64,000 nucleotides of DNA from Tetramitus jugosus (GCA_937625935.1 OW569388.1:310001-374000), one strand, 5' to 3'; numbered from the stretch's first letter, positions 10,321-42,873 are shown. Numbers and translations: made by a program. The notes: a model not told the origin generated them from the letters alone.

Positions 10321-10391
10321 GCATCTGTAGTGTAGGGGTATCATGCAGCGTTGCCATCGCTGCGACCCGGGTTCGAATCCCGGCAGATGCA
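10321..10391 (+). tRNA. tRNA-Gly(GCC)
   Basis: Acceptor stem GCATCTG/CAGATGC+A; anticodon arm CAGCG-TTGCCAT-CGCTG; T arm CCGGG-TTCGAAT-CCCGG; followed by a TTTTT Pol III terminator. Confidence 0.96.
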
Positions 10392-13579: not shown

Positions 13580-16500
13580 TTACAACAAGTTAACGGCGAC
13601 GGTCATCAAAGTGATAAGGAGAGTAACAATACCAGCCTTTAGCATGTGTGCACCGCCAATGGAGCAAGCAATTGGGTCCCTGTCGAATCCAGGAGGACAT
13701 GTGCAAGTTCCAGACTTTCTGTCACATGTTCCTCTTCCACTGCAGTTGTTTGGACATCTTCTGTATTCGCATGTCTGACCAGTGAATCCAGTTTGGCATG
13801 AACATCTACCTCTGGTCAAATCACAGGTTCCTCTACCACGGCAGTTTGGATCCTTGCAACCGAGCAGAGAGCAGTCAAAACCAATGAAACTCTGTCCACC
13901 GACACCAGTGCTCGAGTAACAGTTGCACACACCTTGTACATAATCGCAAGCACCTCTGCCGGTACAGGCGTTAGGGCAAGCTCTCTTACCAACGAGAATG
14001 AGAGAGTGATCGTAACCAGCAGACACATCCAAACCAATGTGACCATCAGGAATGGTGAGTTCCACAAAGCCGTATCGAGTGACAGTGTCACCGAGACCCA
14101 ATTGACCCTTGTCGTTTCTTCCACTGACATATACTCTTCCGTCAGTCATCAAAATCAAAGTATGAGCACCACCTCCGGTTGCAGTAGACACGTAAAGCAC
14201 GGATCCAGTGAGACCAGTCACTTGAGTTGGAGTCTTGACAGTGGTGGTTGAATTACCGAATCCAAGTTGACCATCAGCGTTGCTGCCAGAAGCCCACAGA
14301 GTACCGTCTTGCAACAGGAAGAAGGAGCACTTGGTTCCAGCAAACACCTTGGAAACAGCACCGAGAGAAATTGGCATCCACTGAGAACTGTACAGAGCAA
14401 CAACGAAGCCAGCTCTGCCATCAGTGTTGTCACCAGCACCCCATGCAGTATTGTTCTTGTCAACGTAGAGACTGTGCCAATCTCCGACAGCAATCTTCTT
14501 TGCCGATTGAGTTTGAAGCAGAGTACTACGTTCAATGAGACTAGGACCAGCGCCCAATTGACCCACACGTCCATCACCACACACATACATCTCATAAGCA
14601 CTGGCATCAGTTGTTGCATCACCGAGTGCAAACGTGTGACGTCCACTGACTGCATACTCGCGAATCTTTCTGTTTCTTGTCAAGATACTACCAATATGGT
14701 ACACTGGAGCATACGTTCCGTTCAAGTACTGATATCCCAATTGATACTGTTGATTGCTGCCCCAGGAACCAGCTTGAGTGCTATCATTGTACAACACAAA
14801 GAACGTAGTTGGAGTAAATGGATAGGACACAGCAGCAGAGTGTGAAGTAGCAGAACCGTCAGTGGCACCGAATGCAATGCTAGTGACGTTGACTCCCTTC
14901 AATCCGTTGAACTCTTTTGGAGCAAAGACGTGAAGCTTTGACTCACCATTGGTCAAGAAGGCGTTTGGATATCTCTGAGCGCCCCACAAGAACAATTTTC
15001 CGCTAATTCTAGCAATGGCGCCAGAAACGGAATAACCAGCAACAATCTTCTCAATCATCATCTCTTCCTTGTCATCAGAGTACACGTTGATGACAGCAGG
15101 TGAGAGAACGTTGACGAGAGGACCAGGCAATCTTACGACATCTCCTTGAACATAAAGCTTTTGATCACTTGTGAGAACAAAGAGATTGCTGTCAAGAGAT
15201 TGAATGGTGGTGCCGTTAGGGAACGTTTGACCAGAAATCTTTGTCCAAGAGGAGAGATAAGCTGGTGGTAAGCTATCATAACTGTTCAACACACCCAAGC
15301 TACCAAAAGTGTTGTTACCAACAACCCAAATCTCATCCAAATGAGCAGACGAGTCCAAAACGACCACGCTCAACGAAAATCGACCAAGACTGACTTGTGC
15401 AATGTGTTGATTGGCGCCCAAGGTCACACCCGTAAAGGTGGTGGGTGTGTGCACGGAAGTAGCAGCGGAATTTCCAATTTGAGAGTTCAAATTGGCGCCC
15501 CAGAAATAAAATTGATTGGTGCTGTCAACGGCTACCGTAGTGCTACCCTTGGTAGACACGTGCTTGACGGTCTTTCCTGTCAATAGCTCTTGAGGTGAGT
15601 CATAAATGTTGGTCGAAGTTTGACCCAAGCCCAAAGTTTGACCCTTTGTATCCGAACCACAACCATACAACTTTCCAGTTGTTGTCAAAATGATTGTAAA
15701 TTGATTACCACCAGTCACCTTTTGAATCGTCTTGTCTGCACCATGCGTGCTCAACACGTCAACTGGAGTGTATCTGCTGACTGTCGAATCAGAATTATTT
15801 CTACAGAATTGACCCAATGAATTATCACCAAACGCGTAGCTATCGCCTTGATCATCAACCACAAATGTGCCGTTACCCACAGCCCACGCATTCACAAAAT
15901 GGTAGCTCTCCAAATCCGGTGCTCTCTGTGGTGTAACGACATAGCTAGAATCAGCATACGTTGCATTATCACCAATACCCAACTGACCATACTGTTGAGA
16001 ACCAAACACAACGACTCTACCCAATCCAGTAATAATCAAAGTATGAGCTCTACCACATGCCAACGACAATACAGATGAATCATTGACTGTTTCACCTGAT
16101 TTTTTCAAATTGTTGATATTGACCAAAAATTGGAACGGATAATTTTTGCCGCTCTTTAATCGATCACCAGAAACTCCGTGAGCTTGAGAACCGTGACCCC
16201 ACGTATACACGTTCAATTTGGTGTCAATGAGCACACCATGAAACTCGTATGGATCAAAATTGGCTGGACTCGTATCCGTACTACCAATCAATGATTCATA
16301 ATCATTGGTCGAGTCATGATTCACGACACAAGTTTTCAAGACTTTGGCTGTTGGGTCCCTCAGGTATTTTGTAGTGTCGAACGACCACAGTGTAGTAGAA
16401 TCTTCCAATCCCAATTGACCATACTTGTTGTTACCGAAACCCATGAGAATACGAGTGTTGTTGACAGTTTGAACTACTGCTGCATGAACATTGTTGAAGA

Positions 16501-16582
16501 GTGAGAGAGTAGTGAGTAATAGTAGTAGTATACTTAGTGCATATGGCAAAAAGGATGATGATTTTCTTTTGTTCATCATCAC
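13580..16582 (-). CDS. Cell-surface protein with RCC1-like repeats and tenascin-type EGF repeats, C-terminal TM/GPI signal
   Basis: Signal peptide; many GxNxxGQLG repeats; CPNNCSGRGTC EGF repeats; hydrophobic C-terminus. Confidence 0.85.
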   Translation of the reverse strand: MMMNKRKSSSFLPYALSILLLLLTTLSLFNNVHAAVVQTVNNTRILMGFGNNKYGQLGLEDSTTLWSFDTTKYLRDPTAKVLKTCVVNHDSTNDYESLIGSTDTSPANFDPYEFHGVLIDTKLNVYTWGHGSQAHGVSGDRLKSGKNYPFQFLVNINNLKKSGETVNDSSVLSLACGRAHTLIITGLGRVVVFGSQQYGQLGIGDNATYADSSYVVTPQRAPDLESYHFVNAWAVGNGTFVVDDQGDSYAFGDNSLGQFCRNNSDSTVSRYTPVDVLSTHGADKTIQKVTGGNQFTIILTTTGKLYGCGSDTKGQTLGLGQTSTNIYDSPQELLTGKTVKHVSTKGSTTVAVDSTNQFYFWGANLNSQIGNSAATSVHTPTTFTGVTLGANQHIAQVSLGRFSLSVVVLDSSAHLDEIWVVGNNTFGSLGVLNSYDSLPPAYLSSWTKISGQTFPNGTTIQSLDSNLFVLTSDQKLYVQGDVVRLPGPLVNVLSPAVINVYSDDKEEMMIEKIVAGYSVSGAIARISGKLFLWGAQRYPNAFLTNGESKLHVFAPKEFNGLKGVNVTSIAFGATDGSATSHSAAVSYPFTPTTFFVLYNDSTQAGSWGSNQQYQLGYQYLNGTYAPVYHIGSILTRNRKIREYAVSGRHTFALGDATTDASAYEMYVCGDGRVGQLGAGPSLIERSTLLQTQSAKKIAVGDWHSLYVDKNNTAWGAGDNTDGRAGFVVALYSSQWMPISLGAVSKVFAGTKCSFFLLQDGTLWASGSNADGQLGFGNSTTTVKTPTQVTGLTGSVLYVSTATGGGAHTLILMTDGRVYVSGRNDKGQLGLGDTVTRYGFVELTIPDGHIGLDVSAGYDHSLILVGKRACPNACTGRGACDYVQGVCNCYSSTGVGGQSFIGFDCSLLGCKDPNCRGRGTCDLTRGRCSCQTGFTGQTCEYRRCPNNCSGRGTCDRKSGTCTCPPGFDRDPIACSIGGAHMLKAGIVTLLITLMTVAVNLL

Positions 16583-27599: not shown

Positions 27600-27702
27600 T
27601 ATGGTGGTGGTCCAATTGTAACGTTGTGTGAATTGTTGTGTTGGTGGAATCGAGTTCCAGAAAGGAGAGAGAAAAAAGTGGAATTTGAGATTGCCAAAAA
27701 CT

Positions 27703-27790
27703 AGGCCCCACCGGGGATTGAACCCGGGACCCCTGGCTATCTGATCGTATTAGATACGAGGCCAGTGCACTACCTCTGTGCTATAAGGCC
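27703..27790 (-). tRNA. tRNA-Thr(CGT) with a 16-nt intron at position 37/38
   Basis: Minus strand reads GGCCTTA-TA-GCAC AGAGGTA GTGC-A-CTGGC CT CGT A [TCTAATACGATCAGAT] A GCCAG-GGGTC-CCGGG TTCAATC CCCGG-TGGGGCC-T, with TTTTT just downstream. Confidence 0.93.
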
Positions 27791-27851
27791 GACTTGAATA
27801 CAATTGTTTTTACAATAAATTAAAGGAATATTTGGAAAAAAACAAAACGCA

Positions 27852-29211
27852 ATGAAAACAAACGCAAACATTCCATCCTCTCGCGAGGTTCGAGAATATA
27901 CTCGAGATAGGTATGCGGTGTGGACCACATTGAAAAATGGCAGTGGAATTAATAAAAAGGAAGCAGTCATCAAAGGCAGGGAGTGCAACAGGACAGGCCC
28001 AGCAATTGCTCGATCGATTGGAATGAATTACTCTGAATGGGTGACCAGAGTGCAAGTGATCAAATGGAATAAAGGTCACTTCATTGCATGGGTAAATGTC
28101 AAAGGAGACAAAATATATGAGTTTGTGGATGAATTCAACAAGACTGGAAAGATTTCACACACTGTGGCTTCAATCAAGAGAGGAATGGACTCTGAGAAGA
28201 AACTGGTGGTACACAAGATCGAGGGTAAGACAAAGCTTGAGATAGCCAAAATGATTGGCGAAGACAAGGTGCAACATGTGGATGTAAAGGGCAAAACAGC
28301 CTTTGTCACTATGATGACTCAGACATATGCACAGACAGTGATTGGGAATAAACAGCTGAACTCGGATATCTCACCATATATTAACAAGGAACTAGATCCG
28401 CACAAGGTCATGGCGAAGAGACTCCAGAGGACAAAGGAAGGAATGAGCAAGCAGATAGAAAGTCTTGATCAAGAGAGTCAATAAATTGGAGCAACTGGTT
28501 GCAGAAGGTAGAGGATATCGCAAAGGAAAGAATACTGTAAATACAAAGTCAAGTCAGGTGACGACTAGTATTGAACAGCTTGCTGTTGGGCAGTCTCCAC
28601 AAACAGGTCACACGGAGGATGGATCTATGGACAGAATGATAGGTGAGCAATTGGATAATCAGGAAAGAATGCAGGATGAAGGGGACATTGTCCCTTTCGA
28701 GTCCACAGTTGAAGCAACAAATACCGAAGCACCATCAGAAACACAGTTCGATAGTTCCGAGGAACAGGAGCAACCAGTGAGGATTGAAGAGATGGAAGAT
28801 TCAAATGACAACTGGGAATCAGTATTGTATGAAGAAACCCCCACAACAGTACTAAATGCATGTATTCCCATAACTGCTACCACCAATTCTAGTGAAGGAA
28901 CTACAATTGGAAGTAACTTGCTACAAAGTGAGGAGGAGAAGAAAGAGAGGAGAAGGGAGTGGAGAAGAAGAAGACTCGAGCGCCAATCGAGCATTGAACA
29001 ATTTCTGACTATGGAACGTCCACCAGTTACAATAGAGGAGCATACCCCAATTAAGGAGAGTGGTAAAAGGGGTGCACACCATCCTCTCACCGAAAAGACA
29101 AAGAAGAAACCCATGCTGTTCACACCAGACAAATCAACAGATCGGAATGACGTCAACCAAACGATGGTTGATGAGTCCCCAGAGTCAGTTCAAGAGCAAC
29201 AACCATGTTGA
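27852..29211 (+). CDS. Element 1 ORF1 (two RRM-like repeats, coiled coil, acidic tail); +1 frameshift near 28463
   Basis: ORFs 27852-28484 and 28465-29211 overlap in the +1 frame; RRM-like KKLVVH...TAFVTM; stop codon overlaps the ORF2 ATG. Confidence 0.75.
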
Positions 29212-32200
29212 ATGTTGTATGGTACAACATCAACGGCATCAAAGGAAAAGTCACAGATGTCGTTGCTATGATGGAGGCGGAGGAGATAGATATACTCATG
29301 CTGCAAGAGGCCACGGGAATTGACGATGGGTGGTACAAGAAGATAAGCCGAATGCTCAGTAGAATCAAGTGTGTGTTGATTTGTGACTCACCCAATGTTC
29401 AACTGGCAATCATAGTGCGGACAACAAGAGTGCCAACATATGGACTACTACACAGTGAGGAACGTCTCCAAGTGATCAGAGTAGTAGTTGATAATACTGT
29501 GGTAACACTCGCCAACCACTACGGACCGCACGAAAAAGACTCGGAGCACTACGAAAGAATCAAGGATACGATTAGTGGTTTCGCTGTTGAAGGGAAGTTC
29601 TTGATCGGAGGTGATCACAATGCAGTAGCCAAGGCGGAAGACAGAACAGCAAGAAGAGTTGACTGTAACACCGCGCTACTAGTAGCGTCGATGTCACAAA
29701 ATAACCTAATGGATGTAAACGATGCATTAGGCGTTGAAAGATATCACACATTCTATAGAAAGGGAACATCGTCTCGCATAGATAGTGTGTGGTGTAACAG
29801 AGCGGCGCTGGATATAGTGAGTGAAGTGAAGATGTTCACTAGGAATGGGGTAAACAGTGACCATGTTCCCACCCTCCTGTCATTGAGATGCGAACCGCAG
29901 GTCGCTACTGTTGACGAAAGGGTGTCATATATGTTCCCGAAGAACAAAAAGGAACAGAGGTGGATACTATACGGCCAAAGTGTAGTGAATGAGTTGGAGA
30001 GTCGCAATGTCGAGAACATAAAAGATGTGGACAGGCAATGCGATGCGATTACAACCACACTACTGAAGCACGCACAGTCGTTCCGCAAAACTGACAGTTC
30101 TAAAATTTGGAGGCACAACAGAGCAGTTCGTAGGCTTCTACAACGTAGGGCCATACTAATGAAATTTTTGGAAGAGCATGTGTGGAGTTCGAAGCTTGAA
30201 GCGCTGTGCATGAATTGTGAAGGTGGTGCATCTAGATCGGACAAAGTGTTGGAAACTCTCTGTCAAGTTAACAAAGTTCTACACCATACCAGAGCCATGA
30301 ATGCTGGGAAAAAGTTTCGGAAGTGGGAATGGGTGGCAAGAACTGCGGAATTCAGCGACCCTTCCAAGTTCTTCTCGGCGGCCTCAGCTAAAAAGAGTTG
30401 CAGAATCAGATTGGCAAGAGTCACTAAGGAGGGAATGGAACATACTGACCCAGTCACTGTAGGAGAGGTGGCTGCCAAGTATTTCGAACAAGCTTTCAAA
30501 AGAGAGGAGGCTGACATGGGGTTCCTGAGGAATTTGGAATATCATGGTGACAAAAGAAAGATGCGGGAAGCATTCGTCCCATTTGTGACGGAGGAAGTGG
30601 TAACTGCAGTAAAATGGCTGCGAAACAGGAAATGTCCAGGAGCAGATGGACTGCACAATGAAATGTTCAAACTGCCTCGGACTAAGAAAAGAGACTACAA
30701 TTTTGCGTTGGCCGAAATCCTGTGTGGGTTCTTCAACAATGTGACTTCCAGTGGGTGCTTCCCTAAGGCGTGGAAAGAGTGTATCATCATCCGTGCCTAC
30801 AAGAAAGGGGATGTGACCAACCCGGAGAATTACCGGCCGATTTGTCTGCTGAGTTCATTGTCCAAACTGTATACCAAGCTGCTTAATATGAGAGTTTCTA
30901 AAGCCGCAGAGGTAAGTGGAGTGTTCACCAACGTGCAAGGTGGAGGGAGGAAATTCCGTGATATTAGAGAGAAACTCTCGATTATCAGAGGGGTGATTGA
31001 CTCGGCCAACCGGCATGACAAACAACTGTATCTGTTGTTAACCGACATCTCTAAAGCCTTCGATTCGGTGCCACATAATGCAATCGAAGCGGTGTATAGG
31101 TTCTTTGGTTTCCCGGAAGGAATTGTAAGACTTGTGAGTGGAATGGTTAGAGACAATTTTGCGCGAGTGCTCACGTCATCCTTGTCACGGAGGTTCCACA
31201 TAGGTAAGGGAACGAGACAGGGTGATTCCCTCTCACCAACAACATATGTGCTGGTACATCAAACAGTGCTGATGTATGTTAACAAAAGAATGGATGGATA
31301 CAGGGCTATGTCACAAAGGCTGTGGAATGCTGCATATGTAGATGACTGCAACTTGTTCGCTGAGTCCAGAGCAGACATAGAAAGAGCTACAGAAGCGATG
31401 TCCTCAGTTCTCGGATCACTTAGGATGACCATGCATCCTGACAAGCTGGAACTGTATGTGAGAAAGTCGGAAGACGACAATTGTCATGACATAGCGGTGA
31501 ATGATAATTTGGTAAAAGCGCGAAATCGGAGAGAAGTGTTCAGAGCTCTAGGTCTGTTCACCAATCTTCAGGGTGATACTAAGAAGCAGCGTGAGCAAGC
31601 TTGGCAGAAGGCTCAAAGGGTGGTTGTCAGGCTGAAGTTGATGAAACTGACATCTAGACAAGTGAGCAGAGTTGTCAACACTTGCATTCACCCGATATTC
31701 ACATATGCCTCTGAGTTCACAGACTGGTCAGCAGAATGGTTTGATAAAGTAAATTTGCTGGGCAGAAGTCTAGTGAGGCATGGATCTACTGCTATGCCGC
31801 GATTTCCAGTGGATCTTCTCTCAGTAGGAGACGAAAAGGGGTTGATGGGCTTGAGGGACATCGAGGAGACCATCGCGACCCGTACTTCGTGGTTCGTGTA
31901 CTCGATGATAATTGAGGGACACCGAGGCTAGACAACTGTTTCTTGGCACGCTTGAGGAAATCAAGCAAACACAAACATTCCAAAATGAGAATGTATTCCA
32001 GTCAAGAAACAGGCTTGAATTTGTCAAGCACTCCTTCCTCAAGTGGTGTGCATGCAGAATGCACAAACATGAAATACGTGTCACCAAAACTAATCCCTAC
32101 TGTGATAGTTGTTGGTTGGCCAGGTATGTACCAAGTGCAATTCTCAAGAAGCTCTACAAGGCAGGTATCACAAGCCGTGAGCAACTAATGGTGGACGATC

Positions 32201-33021
32201 ACCCACTGTGTCTGAAGGAATTTAAGCATATTTTTCCCTCCTGCAAGGTCGGAGCAATGTCGTTTGAGGTGCTGAAAGTGTTAATATCCCAAATGAGTGG
32301 GTGTGGATGCGAAGGGAAGAGGTCTATCGAAGGTGCAGAACCGGACTTGTACAAAGGAAATCTGCATGTGGAAAGTAGATCGCATCTACAGTCGCTGTTT
32401 GATCAAGAAAGAAGTGCAAGAATTGGTGAAGACGAGCGATGTTGGCTACAGAGGGCAGCAAATAACAGTGGTGCAGATTTTAGCTTCCTCAAATACCCCC
32501 ATGGTATAGACAGGAAGCTGGAATGGTTTCATGCACAGGTACGCAGTGGAACACTCCACACAGCAGAAGTTGTACGGTATCTATACAACACTGGTGAGGA
32601 ACAGATCATGTGCAGCTGGTGTCAGAGTGAGCCCGAAAGTGTGCTACATTGTTTGATCAGGTGTCCAAGGGCCATTATGATTAGAAGGCAATTGGCTGTG
32701 AAAGTGGGGCATGAGCTCAAGAGTATGGGAATCCCGGACTCTGCCTACGCCGATGTTTGGTTTGATGAGGTGCGACTGAAGGAAGGAAAGGTTGTGAGGC
32801 AACCAATCAAAAAGTCTAGCCGTGAACTGCTGCAAGGAATGATGGGCATAGAAACGGACGCCATCATGGAGGTCGCTGAGGGTCTTATGTCTGGAGGAAT
32901 GAAGAAGCCATTGGCACAGAAGAAAGCCAAAACTTATGTGAATAGTGTCAAGAGGAGATGTCTTAAGACGCTCCACCACCTGTTCACTACGACGAAGGAT
33001 AAATGTAATCAACGGCAATGA
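29205..33021 (+). CDS. Element 1 ORF2: AP endonuclease, reverse transcriptase and C-terminal CCHC; +1 frameshift near 31915
   Basis: APE motifs YNINGI, LQE, GGDHN, SRID, SDH; RT motifs PGADG, YRPICL, DISKAFDSV, GTRQGDSLSP, YVDD; CSWC...ESVLHCLIRC in the second frame. Confidence 0.92.
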
Positions 33022-33169
33022 CGCTCTCCGAGAATCATTGCCTACCAACTGGTAACTAACCAGGGCCTACGCTCTTCGAGCGTAGGCAAGTGAATAAGCA
33101 AGACAATAAAAAGAGCAACCGAAATGGTTGTATTTAAAAAAAAAAAAAAAAATTTGGAAAAAAACAACG

Positions 33170-34081
33170 ATGAAAAAACGAACACACACCCCTGTTGTTC
33201 GCGAGTATGAGAATCCACGCTATGCTGTGTGGACCACAGCACCAAGAGGAACTGCTCCAAGCAAGGAGGTCATCATCACTGGAAAGTGTGATGACTCTCC
33301 CAAGGCTGCCTTGGCCAAGAAGATTGGCTTGGATTTTGGTGATTTGCTCACCAGGGTCCAAGTCATCAAGAAGGGCCCCAAGAGGTTTGTTGCGTGGGTA
33401 ACTGTTGTTGATGACAACATTTACCCATTTGTTGAATCCTTCAACCGCAACAAGAAGATGAGTGGCTGCAAGGCAGCACTCAAGCACAACGTAGATGGTG
33501 CCAAGAAGGTCGTCCTCCACGGAGTTAAAGGTAAGACTGAGGACGACATAAAGGCCATGCTTGGCACAACAAAGGTCAAGAACGTGCTCAAGAAGCACGA
33601 CACCGCCTTTGTTGTGATGGAGTCCGAAACGTATGCCGAAGCTTTGCTTCGGAACGTTCAATCCATGCCAGTGGAGGTGGAAGCAAAACGCTTCCTTCCA
33701 CGCCCACGTGATCCGGTCAAGGCTGTCAGCAAGAGGCTGACCAAGATGTACCAAGAGCTCCTGGTTGTGGTGGACGACCTGATCCTCGAGCTAGTATTGA
33801 ACACCTCCGAGGTGTTCAAGAAAGTCAAGAAAGAGATTGCTGCCCGAGCAATCATGGTGGACCGTGCAAGAAGCACAACCACCGAAGAAGATCCAGTTGA
33901 GTTGGATCTCAGTAACTCTGACTGTGAGTTACAGAGTCCCCAACTCAACGAACACAAGAAGCGATCAGCACGTGTCACCGTTGGTGACACTGCTGCCAAC
34001 AAGATCCCGGCCAGGTTGGCCAGTATCAAGTCAGCTACAATTGAGAGCAGGCAAGCCTGCTCTCACGCAAAAGAAAAATAA
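33170..34081 (+). CDS. Element 2 ORF1, a diverged homologue of element 1 ORF1
   Basis: Shared blocks VREY..RYAVWTT, TRVQVIK...F.AWV.V..D.IY.FV..FN, KK.V.H...GKT, TAFV.M...TYA, DP.K...KRL. Confidence 0.85.
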   Translation: MKKRTHTPVVREYENPRYAVWTTAPRGTAPSKEVIITGKCDDSPKAALAKKIGLDFGDLLTRVQVIKKGPKRFVAWVTVVDDNIYPFVESFNRNKKMSGCKAALKHNVDGAKKVVLHGVKGKTEDDIKAMLGTTKVKNVLKKHDTAFVVMESETYAEALLRNVQSMPVEVEAKRFLPRPRDPVKAVSKRLTKMYQELLVVVDDLILELVLNTSEVFKKVKKEIAARAIMVDRARSTTTEEDPVELDLSNSDCELQSPQLNEHKKRSARVTVGDTAANKIPARLASIKSATIESRQACSHAKEK

Positions 34082-34294
34082 AAGTTCCGCAACGTGGTGC
34101 GTGAGCACCACCCGAGTAAAAATTTGTCCACCAACATTTGGAAGTTGACACGATAGATGAACCGTCGACTTTTTTTTTCTCCCGTGTCGTTCTCACTTAC
34201 GATTCGACTTTTAAAAGTTGGCACGTCAAATACAAAAAAAAAATGGGTCCAAAAAGAAAAACAAAAAGAAATTGTTTTACCTTGTCATAATCTT

Positions 34295-35636
34295 TTATTG
34301 ATGACGAGCAATTTTGGCAGGAGGTTCCACTTCGTCGTCGTCTACATTATCTTCGATAACCTCCTCACTTGAACCTTTCTTCTCAAGGCGCTCCTTGTGA
34401 AAGTCTGCCAATGTCTTACCCAAAGCTTTCGTGATGGAAGCATCATTCGCACCAATGAAGAAGTTGAATGACTTTCGGACACAAGCGCAAATGTTGTTTA
34501 CCAATTGACGATCCAATCTAATCCTATCTGTGCCTGTATATCCAGGACGACTGTAAGACACGTTTACCAAATCCAACTGGCAATCGGAGGCGACAATTTC
34601 CAAGAAGGCCTTGAGAACCACATTCGGTTGGGAAAGACTCAACTTGTGGTGTTGCTCGGGAGTTGTTTTGTAAAACTTGTTGTTGAACTTGAACCCAGTT
34701 TCAAAGTTCAGTGACTGGCACTTTTTTTCCCTGAGTCACTTCAGCCATCTTTTCTATCACTGTCTTTTGGGTCTTCATGAACCATGCTTCAAAGACCTTC
34801 AAGTTCTCCAGTCTCTCCAGAGCTTCAACCAATCTTCTTTGTGCATCCTTGCCTCGTTCAAATTCTTCCACCGGTACCGTGACAAACCCACTATCTTGTG
34901 TAGGAGGCACCTGATCTGATTGACGCAATTGAGGTTCTTGCGTTTGAGTAAGAACCACTGGTGGAGGAGCGATGGTTTGGGAGCTCCCTCTGACATCGAA
35001 GAATTCATCCACATGCTTAAAGCGCTCCCTATCCTCATTAGAACTACTCTTGGTGAATTCATCTTGGTCTACAATGAGAACTTTATCCCAACCGACGACA
35101 GAACCAACGCATACCGGCTCTGTCTCCTCTGGAAGATAAAAATCTGAGGCGAACTGAGCATTAATGAAAATGATGGAGACAGTCACTTTGTCCTCCTGAG
35201 TGCTGGGGATGTCACCGCAGATATTTGCACTTCCAAAATGCGCTCCATCTGCGCACAGCAGCTCGACACGACTACCGTCTTGCAAGAGTGATGGCTTGAA
35301 TTTTGTCAGGTTAGTAGTACCTGATGAGGAAGTTGCCCCTTTCTTTGTGTTGGCAGATGGTTCGACAGGTAGTTGTCTTACAAAAGGTAGACACTCTACC
35401 TTGTACTCCTTGAGTTTCTTGGCCAAATCGTCATACGAGAGTCCAGTAAACTTTTTTTCATTCTTGTTTTTTTGTATTACTTTGTCCTTTGAGGACAGCC
35501 ATACATACAGCAGTTGTTTTTTGGACAGTTTGCTGTAGTTGTTGTTGGAGTCCTGTGACAAGAAGGTGATGAGAGCTAAACGATCTGCGGACGAAAACTT
35601 CTCCACATGAAGAGTTTTGTATGTTCTAGTGCTCAT
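34295..35636 (-). pseudogene. Transposon accessory gene: coiled coil plus C-terminal BEN-like domain; +1 frameshift near the A7 run (34722-34728)
   Basis: ORFs 34701-35636 and 34295-34642 join if one base is removed; VLKAFLEIV...LVNVSYS.PG....RLDRQLVNNI..CV...F...I.K.LG..L.D fits a BEN pattern. Confidence 0.55.
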
Positions 35637-35759
35637 GTTTGTTCAATTTAAGTGTGTTTCGTCTTCAAGACAAAGCTCCGACTTCAGCCGCTCGTGGATA
35701 CAATAAATCACAATTCTCAAAGTTTCTCACTCAAAAAACCTACAAGCACGTCCATTTAT

Positions 35760-38390
35760 ATGAAATATCGAACGACAAGAACAAGAACTAGGCGACAAGT
35801 GTTGTTGAACATGTTGGAAAATCCAACATATAGCTTTGTTGATCATCAATATGATTGTTGCTCCTCAACAGTCCAAACAACACCCAACACTCCACTGATC
35901 ACCACTGCCGTGCCCTCTATCCAATGCCAAACAACTGATTTTGGTGGTAGTGAACCAATGCTTGGTGATGAAGAGTTCATCGAAGCCAAACTCTCGTCCG
36001 TTGATGTAGAAGACTTGGCTCAAGCTCGACCCGTGCTCGAGATGCAAGAATCAAGGTCAGTCATCGGAGATGATTACACCAATGGAATCTCCACGATTCA
36101 TAGTGATGATCCACTATGGGATCAAAAGGTGTGTCTATATCTTCCCATTTCTTTGTATACTGCTTACACTTTGATTTTGTATCTCATGGTCCAACTCAAT
36201 CTGAGCAAGTCAGGTTTGGAAAAGTTGTTGACCTTCCTCCAGGCGTTTCTTCCCAAGAACAATGCTCTAGTGACATCCAAGCACAAGTTTTTCAAGTGCC
36301 TTGCTCACCACTCAAGAATGAACAAGATTTACTTTTGTCGCGAGCACAATTTTGTGACGGGCAACAGTGTTTGCAAGCACAATAGGAATTGTGCCATGGA
36401 GTATTTCCTTTGGAACAATCCGGTCCAGCAGTTTGTTGACAGAATGAAAGTGGACAAAGGGTTTTACACTCTCGCCCAGCACTATCGCCTGAGGCATTGT
36501 AAATCATCTGATATGATTAGTGATGTTTATGACGGTGAAGTTTACAAGAGAATTGCTGCTCCTGTGACAAAAACCAGAGGGGGCTACTCCTTTCTGGTGA
36601 ATTATGACGGTGCCACAAAGTGGAAGAGCAGTCTCGTTACTGCCATTCCCATTTTCATGGTGTGCAACGAGCTGCCTTTCAACGAGAGGATGAAGATTGA
36701 AAATGTCATCTTCTGTGGCGTGTGGTTTGGCAAGAACAAGCCAACATCGAACATTTTGTTCTCGGTGCTAGCAACTGAATTGAAGGAGGCTGATCAAGGT
36801 ATTAGAGGGCAGGATGCACACGGTAAAGAAGAGTTGTTCCGGCTCCGATGTATCAACTCTTGTTGCGGTCTACCGGCTAAAGCAGGTTTGTTCATGCAAC
36901 AACAACACGGTGGAAGGGGCGCCTGTGGATTTTGCAATCACTCTGGTTGCACTATTGATAAGAGGTTTTGTTATCCTCTGTTGAGACGATTCCAAGATTT
37001 TGTGTTTGATCACTCCCTGAGAACAGAGACTCAAGTGAAAGAAGTGTACAACAAGTATCGAACACTACTCAGTGAAGGAGTGGCTTGGTCTGATCTACCA
37101 GTCATCAATGGACACACTGTGGGAATGGACAAGTTTTGGAAGTATTGATATTATGCATTTGCTGGAGGGAGTATTCTCCTTGTTGATGAAGCTTTGGACA
37201 GAATCCAAGGTATGTGACGTTTCATTGTTTACACTCATTCTCCAAGGCACATACTCTTTGTTGACAATCATTCTTCATGGCACTCATGCAGTATAACGAC
37301 AGATTGGGAGCAAGAGTGAGCAAGCAGATGTGGGAGTCATTCGATCAATTGCTCCTGCAGCAACAGCTTCCATCTGTGTTTCGACGAAATCTCAGATCAA
37401 TCATCAAGCATCATCGATATTTTAAAGCATCAGAGTGTCTTGTGTTCATGCTCTATACATCGAGACTTACAAAACACTTGTTTCCAGCAAACACTCCCTA
37501 TTTTGACCACCACATGATTCTGGTCAATGCTCTGTATGACCTGCTTCAACCTGAACTGTCAACGCAACAATTGGATAAAGTACAAATGGAGCTGACACAT
37601 TATGTGACTCAGTTCCAGGAAGTGTATGGTGATCGGTATGTTACCTTAAATGTTCATCTTCTTACCCATTTGGTTGACTGTGTGAAGAGGCATGGACCTC
37701 TCTGGTGCTACACAGCATTCCCGTTTGAGAGTTTTAACCGAGTGATTCTTCGATCCATCCACGGAACGTATCGAGTGGATCAAGGTATTTGCGAGGCTAT
37801 TCCCTTGTTGCAGCATCTCGAAGATCGCTTGAACTGCATGACACACAAAGGAACGATGAAAGTGTTACATGCAATGAGTGTAAGTAGTATGTTGTTGTCA
37901 CTTTGTTCAATGAACTCAACCAATTCTTACTTACCCTTGTAGAAGAGACGATTCGGGTCTCGCTCTGATGGTGTTCGGCTGGACGGGGTGCATGTGTTTG
38001 GAAGAGTGAAGAAAAAGGAGGAGGGCTACTACAAGTACATGAGAAAAGACTGGTATTCAATTGATGCGCTGCATGATGTAAGACAAAGGTCGTACAATAA
38101 CTCCACTGTAAGGTTAAGAGATGGAAGGTATGTTGACTTGGTGTAGCTGTTTCATTTATTCTTGATCATCTAACTGTCATTGTTAAAGAGTTGTTCAAGT
38201 GGTGGGCATTCAAGTGAAAAAGCAGGAGGGAGTGTGCATCTCATTCAAGGTTTTGATGAATCAAGTGTTTCAAGGTCTTGAGCATTGCCGAGTATCGGCT
38301 ATCGAAACTCCAGTGATTGTGTTTTGGAAGCAAGAGAAGGTGATTGGTTGTGTGGATTTGTTGCCCTGGCATGGAGCATTGCTGCGCTAG
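35760..38390 (+). pseudogene. CMC/EnSpm-type (Transposase_21-like) DDE transposase; introns 37210-37291, 37880-37942, 38128-38188; frameshift near 37135
   Basis: SDVYDGEVY; VNYDG...NELP..ER...N....G.W.G..KP; GLPAKA (normally D-x-PA); GACGFC; IDIMH; NVHLLTHL...V.RHGPLW..TAFPFES. The GT-AG introns keep the frame. Confidence 0.85.
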
Positions 38391-38720
38391 TTTAAGTGGT
38401 AGGCGGAGAAGAGGTCACGAGACACTTCAAAGACTTTGTTAATTTTCGATAAAAGAAAAGTTGATACTACCTTTGTTTTATTTGCTCCAAGGTTGCATGT
38501 TGTTCCGTTCATGTTAAGGAAAGTGGAAGGGGAGAACATTGCTTCATTGTTCGAAAAGTTCATACCTCGAAGATCAACCTTTCAATTTTCGACAGTGAAC
38601 ACTGCAAAGAAAACTAAAAAACTTATGTGTCCACTTTGTATTGTTGAGGGGTCGACTTTTAAAAGTCATGTGGAGCTCCAACTGGGAAAATCAGAAAAAC
38701 GACCGTAAAAGTTGGTGGTC

Positions 38721-39295
38721 TTCTGGAGAGATTATCAGTCAAGAAAATTGCAGCAGGAAGGCAAACAGCTTATGCAGTTGCTGAAGATGGATTCTTGTAT
38801 GCTTGGGGTGACAATTCATTCGGTCAACTCGGAATCAATTCAACAATTCCAATGTCAACAACGCCTGTGAGAGTCATTGGAATTCAAAACATCACCGTGC
38901 TTTCAGCAAGTGTTTGGTCAGACAGTGTTCAAGTCACAACAAGTGATGGATTGAGTTATGCTTGGGGAAACAATGCCAACAAGCACTTGAGTTTGGAAAC
39001 AACAATGTCCAAAGTGCTGTTTCCTCATCCAACTTTCAGATTCGAGAATCAAACAAGTTTCATTGTTTCATTTTCATCAGGAAGTGCTCATTCATTGATG
39101 ATTTACAATGGAACATATTGTTTTGGAATTCTTTCAGATGATGAGAATGCTTGTTCAAGGAGAGGAGCATGTGTTGGGCCAGATGAATGCTTGTGTGATG
39201 AAGGATATTTGGGCAATGATTGCAGCACCAATATCTGCTTCGGAAAACACCACACTGACCCGAGAGTCTGCTCGAGTCACGGAGCATGTGTCGCC
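38721..39295 (+). pseudogene. Captured host RCC1+EGF gene fragment inside the transposon's right TIR
   Basis: Open frame KKIAAGRQTAYAVAEDGFLYAWGDNSFGQLG...CSRRGACVGPDECLCDEGYLGNDC; lacks native start and end; flanked by the two halves of the TIR. Confidence 0.8.
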
Positions 39296-39338
39296 AAAAT
39301 TTTTATTCGGGCATTTGTTGTATTAAAAAAAAAAAGGA

Positions 39339-40222
39339 ATATTTGGACAGCTCAGCTGCACCCAAGCGTCGTGCAATTTCCCAAGACAGGTGGTAGTCCA
39401 TGACATGAAGAACATGTCAGTGGGCGACATCAAGAAGCTACTGGGACCTGAGAACCCGCGGCTGACGAAAATCTGAACAGGAATAGAACCAAAAACGGAT
39501 AAAGCGACAACCAGTAACAAATTGTTGATAAGAGGTGTTGAAACAAAATAGAAGATATCAAGCGTTTACACAAGGATAACAAGTTGGAACAAACCTGCAA
39601 TCAACAATGTAACGATAGATGCTGTAATCTTACTCGTACCAGAACCTTGGTACACTGGGAGTGTTGGAAATCTAAGACCAGCAGTTTTCAAAGTCCTCTC
39701 CAACTTCTTTAGATGAGCCATCATTTCAGAATAGCACATTCTACTCATACAGCTGTCAAGATCATACATTGCTGCTTCTAAATATAACATGTTGCATTTG
39801 TTGATAGCACAAGCATGCGCCAAACCTACCTCAGCAATATATCTTGAACCAGTAGCAGAACGATAGACACAAATTCCTTGTTCAGCTCCAGCATTACATG
39901 CACATACAGCTCTATGATCATTGCAATCAGATGTAGTTGCACACATAGTTGAAGGTACTTGTAGAGCTTGGACGACTATGTGTTTATGTGGGAGGTCCGA
40001 CCACGAAACGTCAAAAGATCTGCAGAGGGGCTTGAAGGTCTGATGGGAAAAGAGTAAGACTTTAGGGAGGATTATCGGGAGGAGCTGAAGCTTAGAGGAC
40101 GCAAGAAGAAGGAAGCAGAGAAAAGGATGAAGGGAATCGTCGACTCAACCAAACGTGCCTGCATTAAGGCACAAGGTGTATATCAATTTGTTGTGAAGAG
40201 AAATGAAACACCGTATTAAAAA
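39339..40222 (+). mobile_element. Old, internally deleted retroelement (element 3)
   Basis: ORF1-like remnant (IWTAQ.../RQVVVHDMKNMSVGDIKKLLG); ORF2 C-terminal remnant (VKRSAEGLEGLMGKE*...KGIVDSTKRACIK); 3' end CCGTATT(A)5; degenerate TSD AATAAATTAAAGGA (27814-27827) / AACAAATTAACGGA (40221-40234). Confidence 0.68.
39566..39946 (-). pseudogene. 3' fragment of a Cys-rich surface (GPI/TM-anchored) protein gene embedded antisense in element 3
   Basis: CATTSDCNDHRAVCAC...; hydrophobic C-terminus ITASIVTLLIAGLFQLVILV; no signal peptide; flanked by LINE remnants. Confidence 0.6.
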
Positions 40223-40270
40223 CAAATTAACGGAGAACTACGTTTTATTGAACCACACATACTCGGGCTG

Positions 40271-41281: not shown

Positions 41282-41308
41282 TTTCAGTCTTGTTGTTTTT
41301 CTGGGCAC

Positions 41309-41427
41309 TGAAAAATTCCCAAATTCCACTTTCTTTCTCCCGAGATCTTCCAACTGAAAAGTTCGTCATTCCAAGTTTCTCAACAACAAAACAACCATTG
41401 ATCCAAGTGGAATTTGGGAATTTTTCA
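41309..41427. repeat. Perfect 23-bp inverted repeat in a divergent promoter
   Basis: TGAAAAATTCCCAAATTCCACTT (41309-41331) and AAGTGGAATTTGGGAATTTTTCA (41405-41427), 73-bp spacer. Confidence 0.9.
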
Positions 41428-41451
41428 CAACGACAAGTAAAGTCACACAAC

Positions 41452-42873
41452 ATGGGCACAGCAGCTTCTAACATCAATTATAGTCCCTACTATTCCTCGC
41501 CGGCCTATAGTACAACTACGACCCAACTACGACAATCATCTGATGATGATGAAACTGTCAATTTCTCCAGTGACAATATTCTTGGATTTGGAAACAATGC
41601 CAAGGGTCAACTCGGTCTGGGTGATGATCTTGTTCAGTCAAGTCTTCGAGGTGTACACTCGGTACAGTACCATCATGTGAATCGAGAGGTCAATCTGGTG
41701 GCTACAGGTGGTTACTTTACAATACTGGTGACTGGAACAAGGAATCAGCAAATGTTTGTCTGCGGAGAGAACAGTTATGGTCAATTGTTTATGAACCCAG
41801 AAACAGTGACAAAATTGACAACGTTTTCAGAGTTGGATGCGTCGCAACATCCTTGGTTGAAGCGAGGTGTTCGTGCCATTGGATGCGGTAGAACATGTAC
41901 TATTCTTGTCACCATGGACCATCGTATTGTGAGTGTTGGGTCGAATTATGATGGTCAACTCGGTAGAACCGATTGTACTGCGGCTTTTGAGTGCAGTGAG
42001 CCACTAGGAGATGGATCTCTGGAATTTGTAAAGGTGGCTTGTGGTATGAGGCACTCACTATTGTTGACAAGTGATGGAAGAGTGTTGTGCGCAGGGTCCA
42101 AGGGTTATTGCTCCACTGTTCCAGTAGGCAAAGCAGTGCCTGGATATGATGGTTGGAGATTTTTCCAGGATTTCGATTTGCCAAGGGATGGTTCTCCAGC
42201 TGCAAACAGCATCCAACCCACGGTTTTCGACCGATTCTTGAAGGGCCGTTCTTCGAGGAGTCCGAAGAGTGTGACAGATATTGCATGTGGTTTGTACTTT
42301 TCTGCCTTTTTGGTTGATAATCGTCAAGTATACGTATGTGGGTTCAATCGCGCAGGTGGACCCCAAAACAATACTCCAACATTGCTGTTCGATGCAACAA
42401 CTGTTGGCTCTCAAGGTATCAAGTGTATGACTTGTGCAGGTAGAACTCTTGTGGTTCTTACAGAGGAAGCCGAAGTGTACATTCATGGTGAAGCACTAGC
42501 TTTCAATCACGAGTATCAAACAATGACACACGTCTCCTATTCTTCACTCGGCATTCCACCCATTGATATTCGTTTGATTGCTGGTGGTGAACAACACATG
42601 ATTTTTGTGACCTCCCAAAACCATGTTTATGTGTGTGGCACGAACTCCTTTGGTCAACTGGGAGAGAACGTTTATACGACACAACACTTGGCCATTGGTC
42701 CATTGCGCGACATTAATCATAAGCTTGAACTTCATCGGAGAGAAGTGTTCCATGTGTGTTGTGGTGCCTACTTTACTCTTGTTGTATTGAAACGTCCGGT
42801 CAAGAATGAAAGACTGTGGACGTATTGTCTGAAACAACAACTCACCGAAGTTGAAGTTTTCACACAGCACTAG
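41452..42873 (+). CDS. RCC1-repeat protein with a possible N-myristoylation motif (MGTAAS)
   Basis: Multiple GxNxxGQL and VACG.RHSLLL repeats. Confidence 0.85.
   Translation: MGTAASNINYSPYYSSPAYSTTTTQLRQSSDDDETVNFSSDNILGFGNNAKGQLGLGDDLVQSSLRGVHSVQYHHVNREVNLVATGGYFTILVTGTRNQQMFVCGENSYGQLFMNPETVTKLTTFSELDASQHPWLKRGVRAIGCGRTCTILVTMDHRIVSVGSNYDGQLGRTDCTAAFECSEPLGDGSLEFVKVACGMRHSLLLTSDGRVLCAGSKGYCSTVPVGKAVPGYDGWRFFQDFDLPRDGSPAANSIQPTVFDRFLKGRSSRSPKSVTDIACGLYFSAFLVDNRQVYVCGFNRAGGPQNNTPTLLFDATTVGSQGIKCMTCAGRTLVVLTEEAEVYIHGEALAFNHEYQTMTHVSYSSLGIPPIDIRLIAGGEQHMIFVTSQNHVYVCGTNSFGQLGENVYTTQHLAIGPLRDINHKLELHRREVFHVCCGAYFTLVVLKRPVKNERLWTYCLKQQLTEVEVFTQH

What the first reader, a model, noticed from the sequence alone, without database searches (positions are those of the whole stretch)
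27703..40234. tRNA-gene-targeted LINE stack: three successive retrotranspositions 37-55 bp upstream of tRNA-Thr(CGT)
Seen in sequence: three poly(A)-tailed elements lie head-to-tail, all with 5' ends facing the 5' end of the tRNA gene. Each poly(A) is followed by a copy of a different, overlapping piece of the tRNA-upstream DNA: ATTTGGAAAAAAACAA (27830-45 = 33152-67), AAAGGAATATTTGGA (27822-36 = 39333-47) and AATAAATTAAAGGA vs AACAAATTAACGGA (27814-27 vs 40221-34, 12/14). Nesting gives the order element 3, then 2, then 1, each new copy pushing older ones away from the tRNA; this matches their increasing decay. The three target sequences differ, so targeting appears to depend on position rather than sequence. 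Established knowledge: Dictyostelium TRE5-A, an APE-type non-LTR element, inserts about 50 bp upstream of tRNA genes in this orientation through ORF1p-TFIIIB contact. Inference: this is an independent or unrecognised Pol III-targeting LINE family in a non-dictyostelid protist.
Basis: partly seen in the sequence, partly recalled or inferred. Interest (0 to 1): 0.95.

Follow-up and report, generated by a model that had tools for sequence, protein, structure and literature searches.

The report
LINEs aimed upstream of Pol III genes
A free-living amoeboflagellate relative of Naegleria carries retrotransposons that insert about 50 bases upstream of tRNA and 5S rRNA genes, always head to head, as the TRE5 elements of Dictyostelium do, and this window holds a pile of three such insertions at one tRNA gene.

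Summary
The core observation holds. Upstream of tRNA-Thr(CGT) lie nested poly(A)-tailed retro-insertions. Their target-site duplications (TSDs) match 16/16 (element 1), 15/15 (element 2) and 12/14 (element 3, weaker).

The anatomy needs correcting:
- Only element 1 is a full LINE (5.3 kb: ORF1, then APE-RT-CCHC ORF2). Both of its ORFs are broken.
- Element 2 is a 1-kb copy of an abundant ORF1-only non-autonomous element, split by a 5.2-kb DNA transposon.
- Element 3 is a composite remnant.

Genome-wide tests support targeting:
- 17 of 34 tRNA genes chosen without regard to repeats carry an element starting mostly 36-58 bp upstream. All 17 have the element's 5' end towards the tRNA.
- Dispersed 5S rRNA genes are hit at 50-51 bp.
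- TSDs are 15-16 bp with no shared sequence.
- A related species' assembly and an environmental contig show the same geometry.

The host groups with Heterolobosea (one marker gene), not dictyostelids.

Most likely mechanism: target-primed reverse transcription steered by the Pol III transcription complex. The tether itself is inferred. Kinship to TRE5 could not be tested.

First readers of this scan noted the same system in many other windows of this genome; none of those notes had been followed up. I found no paper describing it.

The parts
27703..27790 (-). tRNA-Thr(CGT) gene with an intron; the Pol III gene that was targeted
   Evidence: ARAGORN
27791..27845 (.). 55-bp spacer. It holds the tRNA-proximal copies of the three nested TSDs: 27814-27827 (element 3, 12/14), 27822-27836 (element 2), 27830-27845 (element 1). 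Its last 9 nt are the original 5' end of element 2.
   Evidence: Sequence; shuffle test
27846..33152 (+). Element 1: the only full-length copy of LINE family A found in this assembly. It has a 6-nt 5' UTR and ends GTATTT plus A17. It is young: 5'-truncated copies elsewhere are 97-99% identical.
27852..29211 (+). Element 1 ORF1, in two frames (27852-28484, then 28465-29211). It is broken by a 1-nt indel near 28467. A variant contig in run X1 lacks that extra base.
   Evidence: homology to the ORF1 of families B and C
29205..33021 (+). Element 1 ORF2, in two frames (29205-31931, then 31912-33021). It is broken by a 5-bp deletion at about 31913 that every other copy lacks. Domains: APE endonuclease (GGDHN, SRID and SDH motifs), RT (RVT_1; YVDD), C-terminal CX2CX8HX4C.
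33152..33167 (.). Distal copy of element 1's 16-bp TSD
33168..34110 (+). Element 2, main part (its first 9 nt, 33159-33167, lie inside element 1's TSD). It belongs to family B, an ORF1-only non-autonomous element. It is 97-99% identical to more than 40 other copies and lacks two internal stretches (about 226 and 180 bp) relative to the 1.39-kb reference L040:1496-2882.
34111..39311 (+). DNA transposon inserted into the 3' end of element 2. It has 15-of-16 matching terminal inverted repeats (CCCGAGTAAAAATTT at the left end; the right end differs at one base) and a 2-bp duplication (CA at 34109-34110 and 39312-39313). Transposase ORFs lie at 35652-37148 (Transposase_21, below cutoff) and 37277-37942 (DUF4218, below cutoff).
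38715..39288 (+). RCC1/EGF gene fragment carried inside the transposon. It is 96% identical to one locus on contig 40 and absent from the other transposon copies.
39312..39335 (+). Last 24 nt of element 2: 3' end GTATT plus A11
   Evidence: 100% match to the 3' end of the L040 copy
39333..39347 (.). Distal copy of element 2's 15-bp TSD. Its right part is probably the original 5' end of element 3.
39348..39454 (+). Element 3, piece a: an ORF1 fragment of family C, another abundant ORF1-only family (87-89% to more than 30 copies)
39455..39989 (.). Unique 535 bp inside element 3. It is not repeated and has no LINE homology. A single-copy 126-aa ORF lies on the minus strand (39566-39946). Origin unexplained.
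39990..40220 (+). Element 3, piece b: the ORF2 end of LINE family D (84-88%). It then jumps to GTATT plus A5, lacking about 70 bp of family D's 3' UTR.
40221..40234 (.). Candidate distal TSD of element 3 (12/14 to 27814-27827)

Best explanation
These are APE-type non-LTR retrotransposons (several related LINE families plus ORF1-only passengers). They integrate by target-primed reverse transcription at a position set by the RNA polymerase III transcription complex sitting on a tRNA or 5S rRNA gene.

Inferred geometry from the TSDs:
- The first nick, which primes on the poly(A) tail, falls about 33-41 bp upstream of the gene's 5' end, on the gene's sense strand.
- The second nick falls 15-16 bp further out.
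- Every copy therefore ends up with its 5' end about 50 bp from the gene, pointing at it.

A new insertion lands at the same distance. It cuts through the junction of the spacer and the previous element and pushes older copies outwards.

In this window that happened three times. First came a now decayed composite remnant, then an ORF1-only element (later hit by a DNA transposon), and last the full-length LINE.

Shown here: geometry, orientation, TSDs, the range of targets, the domain content, and recurrence in a related species.

Inferred: that a protein of the element (by analogy ORF1p, here a tandem-RRM plus coiled-coil protein) is tethered to TFIIIB, TFIIIC or Pol III.
For: - Element-centred: among the first 30 loci found with element 1, 20 of the 21 Pol III genes detected lie on the element's 5' side, head to head. 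Thirteen of them are 28-67 bp away and include tRNAs for Thr, Ser, Asp, Phe, Asn, Gln and Trp.
- Gene-centred: of 34 tRNA genes picked only by Rfam score, 17 have an element. All 17 point their 5' end at the tRNA, and most start 36-58 bp upstream.
- 5S rRNA genes, which have a different promoter type, are hit at 50, 51 and 50 bp (L002, L007, L014).
- Clean 15-16-bp TSDs span about 34-56 bp upstream and share no sequence.
- In this window the TSDs are nested: 16/16, 15/15 and 12/14.
- ORF2 is collinear with human L1 ORF2p (E 1e-17). The APE catalytic motifs, the RT YVDD motif and a CCHC motif are present.
- The ORF1p model is confident over residues 10-180 and matches tandem-RRM proteins (Foldseek E about 1e-5). 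A long helix follows.
- The same geometry appears in a related species' assembly (tRNA-Val, 58-bp spacer, element 78% identical) and in an environmental contig.
- Published parallel: TRE5 inserts 40-54 bp upstream of tRNA genes and 37-41 bp upstream of 5S genes, with ORF1p binding TFIIIB (PMC5911963).
Against: - No protein contact was tested.
- The tRNA sample covers only about six isoacceptor families.
- Some copies lie 145-1300 bp from the nearest Pol III gene. Stacking explains some of these (L005/L023, L012), but it was not checked for all.
- One pair of matches on contig 7 points its 3' end at a 5S gene 193 bp away.
- No empty-site allele was seen among the listed joints.
- Element 1 has both ORFs broken, so current activity of this copy is excluded.
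Confidence: 0.85

Rival explanations
1. Random integration followed by selection. Elements insert anywhere, and only copies in harmless DNA beside Pol III genes survive in this compact genome.
For: The genome is gene-dense, with long ORFs packed throughout the window. Such genomes tolerate few insertion sites (argument of PMC5006619).
Against: - Selection does not give a fixed orientation (17 of 17; 20 of 21).
- Selection does not give a fixed window of about 20 bp, nor TSDs at the same distance at both tRNA and 5S genes.
- Very young copies (97-99% identical) already sit there.
- Nothing was found downstream of the tRNA genes in the loci with both flanks.
Confidence: 0.04
2. Sequence-specific endonuclease targeting, as in R1, R2 or Tx1. 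The endonuclease would recognise a short conserved motif, for example a TATA-like element, that happens to lie upstream of Pol III genes.
For: The spacers are A+T-rich, so a degenerate motif cannot be excluded by eye.
Against: - The 15-16-bp TSDs share no sequence.
- Re-insertions cut inside the 5' end of an earlier element at the same distance from the gene.
- tRNA and 5S upstream regions are unrelated, yet are hit at the same distance.
Confidence: 0.08
3. Assembly artefact, or recombination between dispersed copies, rather than three serial insertions.
For: - Repeats of 97-99% identity can mislead assemblers.
- No single listed contig spans the stack.
- Element 3 is a patchwork with a unique 535-bp insert.
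Against: - Perfect nested duplications of the unique tRNA-upstream DNA after two poly(A) tails cannot come from misjoining.
- The last 24 nt of element 2 resume exactly after the transposon, with a 2-bp duplication.
- Stacks of the same kind occur at other loci and in another species' assembly.
Confidence: 0.03

Closest known systems
TRE5-A (and TRE5-B/C) of Dictyostelium discoideum and TRE5-like elements of other dictyostelids
   Same: - Non-LTR element with two ORFs and an oligo(A) tail.
- ORF2 has APE, RT and a His/Cys-rich end.
- Inserts about 50 bp (40-54) upstream of tRNA genes and about 40 bp upstream of 5S genes (PMC5911963, PMC5006619). The head-to-head orientation of TRE5 is recalled from memory.
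- Copies pile up at one gene.
- From memory: ORF1-only derivatives (TRE5-A.2) ride on the autonomous element, as families B and C appear to do here.
   Different: - The host is a heterolobosean (Discoba), not an amoebozoan.
- No dictyostelid protein appears among the named relatives of ORF2 or ORF1.
- The 5' UTR is only about 6-25 nt, whereas TRE5-A has a long modular 5' UTR (from memory).
- Here the 5S genes are dispersed chromosomal copies.
- Kinship of the RT domains was not testable.
NLTR-B of Polysphondylium (Heterostelium) pallidum
   Same: A non-LTR element unrelated to the TREs that nevertheless sits about 50 bp upstream of tRNA genes. It is the precedent for convergent origin of this habit (PMC5006619).
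   Different: NLTR-B has an RNase H domain after the RT and a single ORF (PMC5006619, PMC5911963). No RNase H was detected here.
Ty3 and Ty1 of Saccharomyces; DGLT-A of Dictyostelium
   Same: They use the Pol III machinery (TFIIIB for Ty3, the AC40 subunit for Ty1) as a landing beacon upstream of tRNA genes (PMC5911963, PMC7459421).
   Different: They are LTR elements that use an integrase. Their distances differ (at the transcription start site for Ty3, a broad window for Ty1) and they have no fixed head-to-head rule.
Human LINE-1
   Same: Collinear ORF2p (APE, RT, Cys-rich end), an RRM-containing ORF1p with a coiled coil, a poly(A) tail, about 15-bp TSDs and frequent 5' truncation.
   Different: L1 has no Pol III targeting. 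The order of domains in ORF1p differs: here two RRM-like domains come first and the helix follows.

Membership tests
Pol III-gene-targeting non-LTR retrotransposons with TRE5-type behaviour | Insertion in a narrow window about 40-55 bp upstream of tRNA genes | tested here: met
   Starts are mostly 36-58 bp upstream in a gene-centred sample. TSDs span about 34-56 bp.
Pol III-gene-targeting non-LTR retrotransposons with TRE5-type behaviour | Fixed orientation, with the element's 5' end facing the gene's 5' end | tested here: met
   17 of 17; 20 of 21.
Pol III-gene-targeting non-LTR retrotransposons with TRE5-type behaviour | Targets defined by Pol III transcription, not by tRNA sequence (other Pol III genes are hit too) | tested here: met
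   5S rRNA genes are hit at 50-51 bp. At least 15 different tRNA species are hit.
Pol III-gene-targeting non-LTR retrotransposons with TRE5-type behaviour | Dependence on an active Pol III complex, by contact of an element protein with TFIIIB | not testable with these tools
   Host TFIIIB subunits could not be fetched, so no complex prediction was run. This needs a bench test.
TRE5 clade of dictyostelids (phylogenetic membership) | RT domain clusters with TRE5 elements in a tree | not testable with these tools
   - No TRE5 sequence was available by reference.
- The named nearest relatives of ORF2 are arthropod and algal LINEs at 26-29%.
- Most near hits are unnamed.
TRE5 clade of dictyostelids (phylogenetic membership) | Long modular 5' UTR (A and B modules) carrying the promoter | tested here: not met
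   ORF1's ATG lies 6-25 nt from the 5' end in full-length copies. The feature of TRE5-A itself is recalled from memory.
APE-type (L1-like) LINE | N-terminal apurinic-endonuclease-like domain with catalytic Asp/Asn/His motifs | tested here: met
   GGDHN, SRID and SDH align to D145/N147, D205 and D229/H230 of the L1 endonuclease. The domain-only scores are marginal (PDB E 0.007; Pfam E 0.0013, below cutoff). The full-length alignment to L1 ORF2p scores 1e-17.
APE-type (L1-like) LINE | RT with a YXDD motif, a C-terminal Cys/His motif, a poly(A) tail, variable 5' truncation and TSDs | tested here: met
   RVT_1 at 2.6e-26; YVDD; CX2CX8HX4C; tails of A8-A29; truncated copies; 15-16-bp TSDs.

The most novel reading that the evidence does not exclude
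Fixed-distance, fixed-orientation landing on Pol III genes arose independently in Discoba, in a LINE lineage unrelated to the dictyostelid TREs. These elements have almost no 5' UTR, so they may also depend on the site they choose for their own transcription, through divergent promoter activity or open chromatin upstream of Pol III genes. Targeting would then serve expression as well as safety.
Probability: 0.45. Interest if true: 0.75.

Novelty: new member of a known kind. Interest (0 to 1): 0.62.

Why it matters
Until now, LINEs aimed at Pol III genes were described only in social amoebae. The 2016 survey (PMC5006619) found none in other Amoebozoa and left the origin of the habit open.

A second, well populated system in a distant supergroup would provide three things:
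- A natural replicate for asking which part of the Pol III machinery a LINE can read, and how an endonuclease is placed at a set distance.
- A test of whether compact genomes repeatedly select for this 'safe haven' strategy.
- A set of young copies, ORF1-only passengers and nested stacks from which rates and rules can be read.

Position-specific LINEs are also of practical interest as models for safe-site DNA insertion.

Tried and rejected
- Element 2 as a 6.2-kb LINE: rejected. Only 33197-33661 and the last 24 nt are retroelement sequence; the rest is a DNA transposon with its cargo.
- The RCC1/EGF fragment as a retrocopy ending in the GTATT(A)n tail: rejected. The tail belongs to element 2, and the fragment lies inside the transposon's inverted repeats.
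- Element 3 continuing past 40220 into a family-D 3' UTR: rejected. There is no significant similarity (714 of 2000 shuffles reach the score). No other genomic copy shares its short end.
- The 'frameshifts' in element 1 as long-read homopolymer errors: rejected for ORF2. It is a private 5-bp deletion, and it is not in a homopolymer.
- Full tRNA census of the genome: not possible.
- Fetching host TBP/Brf1 for a complex prediction: not possible for the same reason.
- Naming the LINE clade from database neighbours: the close hits are unnamed environmental or related-assembly fragments.
- Identifying the species: accession searches in papers gave nothing.
- Empty-site allele for element 1: no such joint among those listed. 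Contigs cannot prove absence.
- Pfam, PDB sequence search and ESM Atlas features for ORF1p: nothing significant by sequence. Only the fold search was informative.


Full report
WHAT IS IN THE WINDOW

ARAGORN finds a tRNA with an intron and anticodon CGT (Thr) at 27703-27790 on the minus strand.

Element 1
- It starts 55 bp upstream of the tRNA's 5' end and runs on the plus strand from 27846 to 33152. It ends GTATTT plus 17 A.
- It has a 6-nt leader.
- ORF1 is homologous to the ORF1 of other families here.
- ORF2 has three parts. The RT domain matches RVT_1 at 2.6e-26. The N-terminus aligns to the L1 endonuclease with the catalytic GDxN, D and DH motifs in place. The C-terminus carries a CX2CX8HX4C motif.
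- The whole of ORF2 is collinear with human L1 ORF2p, residues 84-720, at E 1e-17.
- Both ORFs are broken. ORF1 changes frame near 28467; a variant contig in run X1 lacks one base there.
- ORF2 carries a 5-bp deletion at about 31913 that every other copy, in all families, lacks.
- It is the only full-length copy of its family found in the assembly. The other copies are 5'-truncated and 92-99% identical, most of them 97-99%.

Element 2
- After element 1's tail comes a 16-bp repeat of 27830-27845, and then element 2 begins.
- Genome searches show that only 33168-34110 and 39312-39335 belong to a retroelement. That element is family B: 1.39 kb, with one 414-aa ORF1, no ORF2, the same GTATT(A)n end, and more than 40 copies at 94-99% identity.
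- The 5.2 kb in between (34111-39311) is a DNA transposon. It has imperfect terminal inverted repeats, a 2-bp duplication (CA), and ORFs with weak Tnp2/DUF4218 matches. Independent copies lie on contigs 21, 29, 10, 11 and 8.
- The window's copy of the transposon also carries a 0.6-kb RCC1/EGF gene fragment, 96% identical to a locus on contig 40.
- After element 2's A11 tail comes a 15-bp repeat of 27822-27836.

Element 3
- It is a remnant in three pieces: 107 bp of the ORF1 of family C (another abundant ORF1-only family), 535 bp of unique DNA, and 231 bp of the ORF2 end of LINE family D.
- It stops at GTATT plus A5, without the last ~70 bp of D's 3' UTR.
- The 14 nt after that tail match 27814-27827 at 12 of 14 positions. 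By two controls, p is about 0.002-0.015.
- An alignment suggests that the right half of element 2's duplication is the diverged 5' end of the family C piece. That makes the three nested duplications mutually consistent.
- The order is element 3, then 2, then 1, with the junctions at 37, 46 and 55 bp from the tRNA. Decay agrees with this order: about 87-88% identity for element 3's pieces against 97-99% for the other two.

IS IT TARGETING?

Element-centred evidence
- The 30 best loci found with element 1 were scanned for tRNA and 5S genes. Of the 21 Pol III genes found, 20 lie on the element's 5' side, head to head. Thirteen of these are at 28-67 bp.
- Loci without a nearby gene are mostly diverged families. 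There the match starts inside the element, so the true 5' end lies outside the piece that was fetched.

Gene-centred evidence
- Seventeen of them have a repeat upstream. All 17 are in the same orientation. Most start at 36-58 bp.
- The other tRNA in this window, Gly-GCC at 10321-10391, is empty.

Other Pol III genes and the target sites
- 5S rRNA genes are dispersed here, with at least 47 copies. Three of the fetched loci have a LINE 5' end at 50, 51 and 50 bp, each with a clean 15-16-bp duplication.
- Duplications at seven loci are 15-16 bp (21 bp at one locus). They span about 34-56 bp upstream and share no sequence.
- Because tRNA and 5S genes use different promoter types, what the targets have in common is the Pol III machinery (TFIIIB, TFIIIC, the polymerase). 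That last step rests on established knowledge.

Other DNA
- A contig of a related species' assembly has a family-B-like element (78% identical) 58 bp upstream of tRNA-Val, head to head, with a second element stacked behind it. That assembly, GCA_037189345.1, also holds a thiolase 93% identical to the host's and an RT 60% identical.
- An environmental contig shows a 97.5% identical family B copy about 59 bp from a tRNA.

WHO IS THE HOST?

- The window's intron-less thiolase is closest, among named proteins, to those of Acrasis kona (69%), Naegleria lovaniensis and N. gruberi (68% and 67%) and Willaertia magna (66%). Dictyostelid thiolases score 56-58%.
- So the genome (26.35 Mb, 56 contigs) is most likely a heterolobosean. 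This rests on one marker gene.
- Runs holding this DNA include soil, groundwater and sediment metagenomes.

HOW IT LIKELY WORKS

- Geometry, shown: the 3' poly(A) end is distal and the duplication is 15-16 bp.
- Nick positions, inferred from that geometry and from the established model of target-primed reverse transcription: the priming nick lies about 33-41 bp upstream of the gene, on the gene's sense strand. The second nick lies about 49-58 bp upstream.
- This is the upstream edge of the region that TFIIIB occupies in model organisms (established knowledge).
- By analogy with TRE5-A, whose ORF1p binds TBP, Brf1 and Bdp1 (PMC5911963), an element protein is probably tethered to the complex.
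- ORF1p here folds with confidence over residues 10-180 (pLDDT about 85) into two RRM-like domains, followed by a long helix and a disordered basic tail. It has no named sequence relatives.
- Families B and C keep only ORF1, so they must borrow ORF2p from LINEs such as families A and D. They share the GTATT/GTATGG(A)n end with those LINEs.
- Full-length copies have only 6-25 nt before the ATG. How they are transcribed is open. One possibility is use of the Pol III gene's upstream region.

COMPARISON AND NOVELTY

- The behaviour equals that of TRE5 in distance, in 5S targeting and in ORF1-only riders. The head-to-head orientation of TRE5 and its ORF1-only TRE5-A.2 derivatives are recalled from memory; the distances and 5S targeting are from PMC5911963.
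- Membership of the TRE5 clade could not be tested. The short leader argues against simple identity, and no dictyostelid protein appears among the named neighbours.
- The 2016 survey found TRE-like elements only in dictyostelids (PMC5006619). The 2018 review lists no Pol III-targeted non-LTR element outside them (PMC5911963).
- Full-text searches for Heterolobosea or Naegleria together with such elements found nothing. A 2026 preprint on heterolobosean transposons does not mention tRNA at all.
- First readers of this scan flagged the same system in many other windows of this genome. None of those notes had been followed up.

LIMITS

- The taxonomy rests on one marker.
- The tRNA sample is small and narrow.
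- There is no RT tree with reference clades, no RNA evidence and no long-read check of the stack.
- Laying public contigs on 27650-33400 showed coverage, variant copies and depth rising towards the 3' end. It showed no bridging record among those listed and no empty site.

Noticed in passing
window 34111-39311; also L033 (contig 29) and L032 (contig 21): - A 4.6-5.2-kb DNA transposon with weak Tnp2 (Transposase_21) and DUF4218 matches, 15-of-16 matching terminal inverted repeats and a 2-bp CA duplication.
- On contig 29 a 97% identical copy sits at the same position in the 3' end of a different (66% identical) ORF1-only retroelement. This suggests a preferred target inside these retroelements.
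- From memory, a 2-bp duplication fits the Mirage branch of the CACTA/Mirage/Chapaev superfamily.
   Followed up: partly
window 38715-39288: The window's transposon copy carries a 0.6-kb fragment of an RCC1/EGF-repeat gene, 96% identical to contig 40:426945-427529, just inside its right end. The other copies lack it, so this looks like gene-fragment capture.
   Followed up: partly
window 39455-39989: 535 bp of single-copy DNA, with a 126-aa minus-strand ORF (39566-39946, no family), sits between two retroelement fragments of element 3. Origin unknown.
   Followed up: partly
window 10321-10391: The tRNA-Gly(GCC) gene in the same window has no retroelement in the 600 bp upstream. This is an empty target, in line with about half of the sampled tRNA genes being occupied.
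   Followed up: yes
window 28306-30059 and 31913 (runs X1, X2): Public contigs of the same organism hold variants of family A that lack element 1's two lesions. They have one base fewer at 28467 and five bases more at 31913, and differ at 9-32 other positions. The isolates therefore carry at least one further, possibly less damaged, full-length copy that was not seen in this assembly.
   Followed up: no
L038, L041, L042, L057 (5' ends of family B copies): Full-length family B copies begin either at AACGCCG-ATG or with an extra AAAAAACGCAG unit in front. The leader is thus a variable, A-rich 7-25 nt.
   Followed up: partly
genome contigs 54 and 56: The two contigs give identical tRNA hits at identical coordinates. 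They are probably the same organelle or extrachromosomal sequence assembled twice.
   Followed up: no
window 13580-16582 (-), 41290-42873 (+): Several genes in the window encode RCC1-repeat proteins, one with tenascin/teneurin-type EGF repeats. This looks like an expanded family in this genome.
   Followed up: no
contig 7:241083-241586 against the 5S gene at 240771-240890: One pair of family A matches has its 3' end, not its 5' end, facing a 5S gene 193 bp away. It could belong to a different Pol III gene on its other side. Not checked.
   Followed up: no
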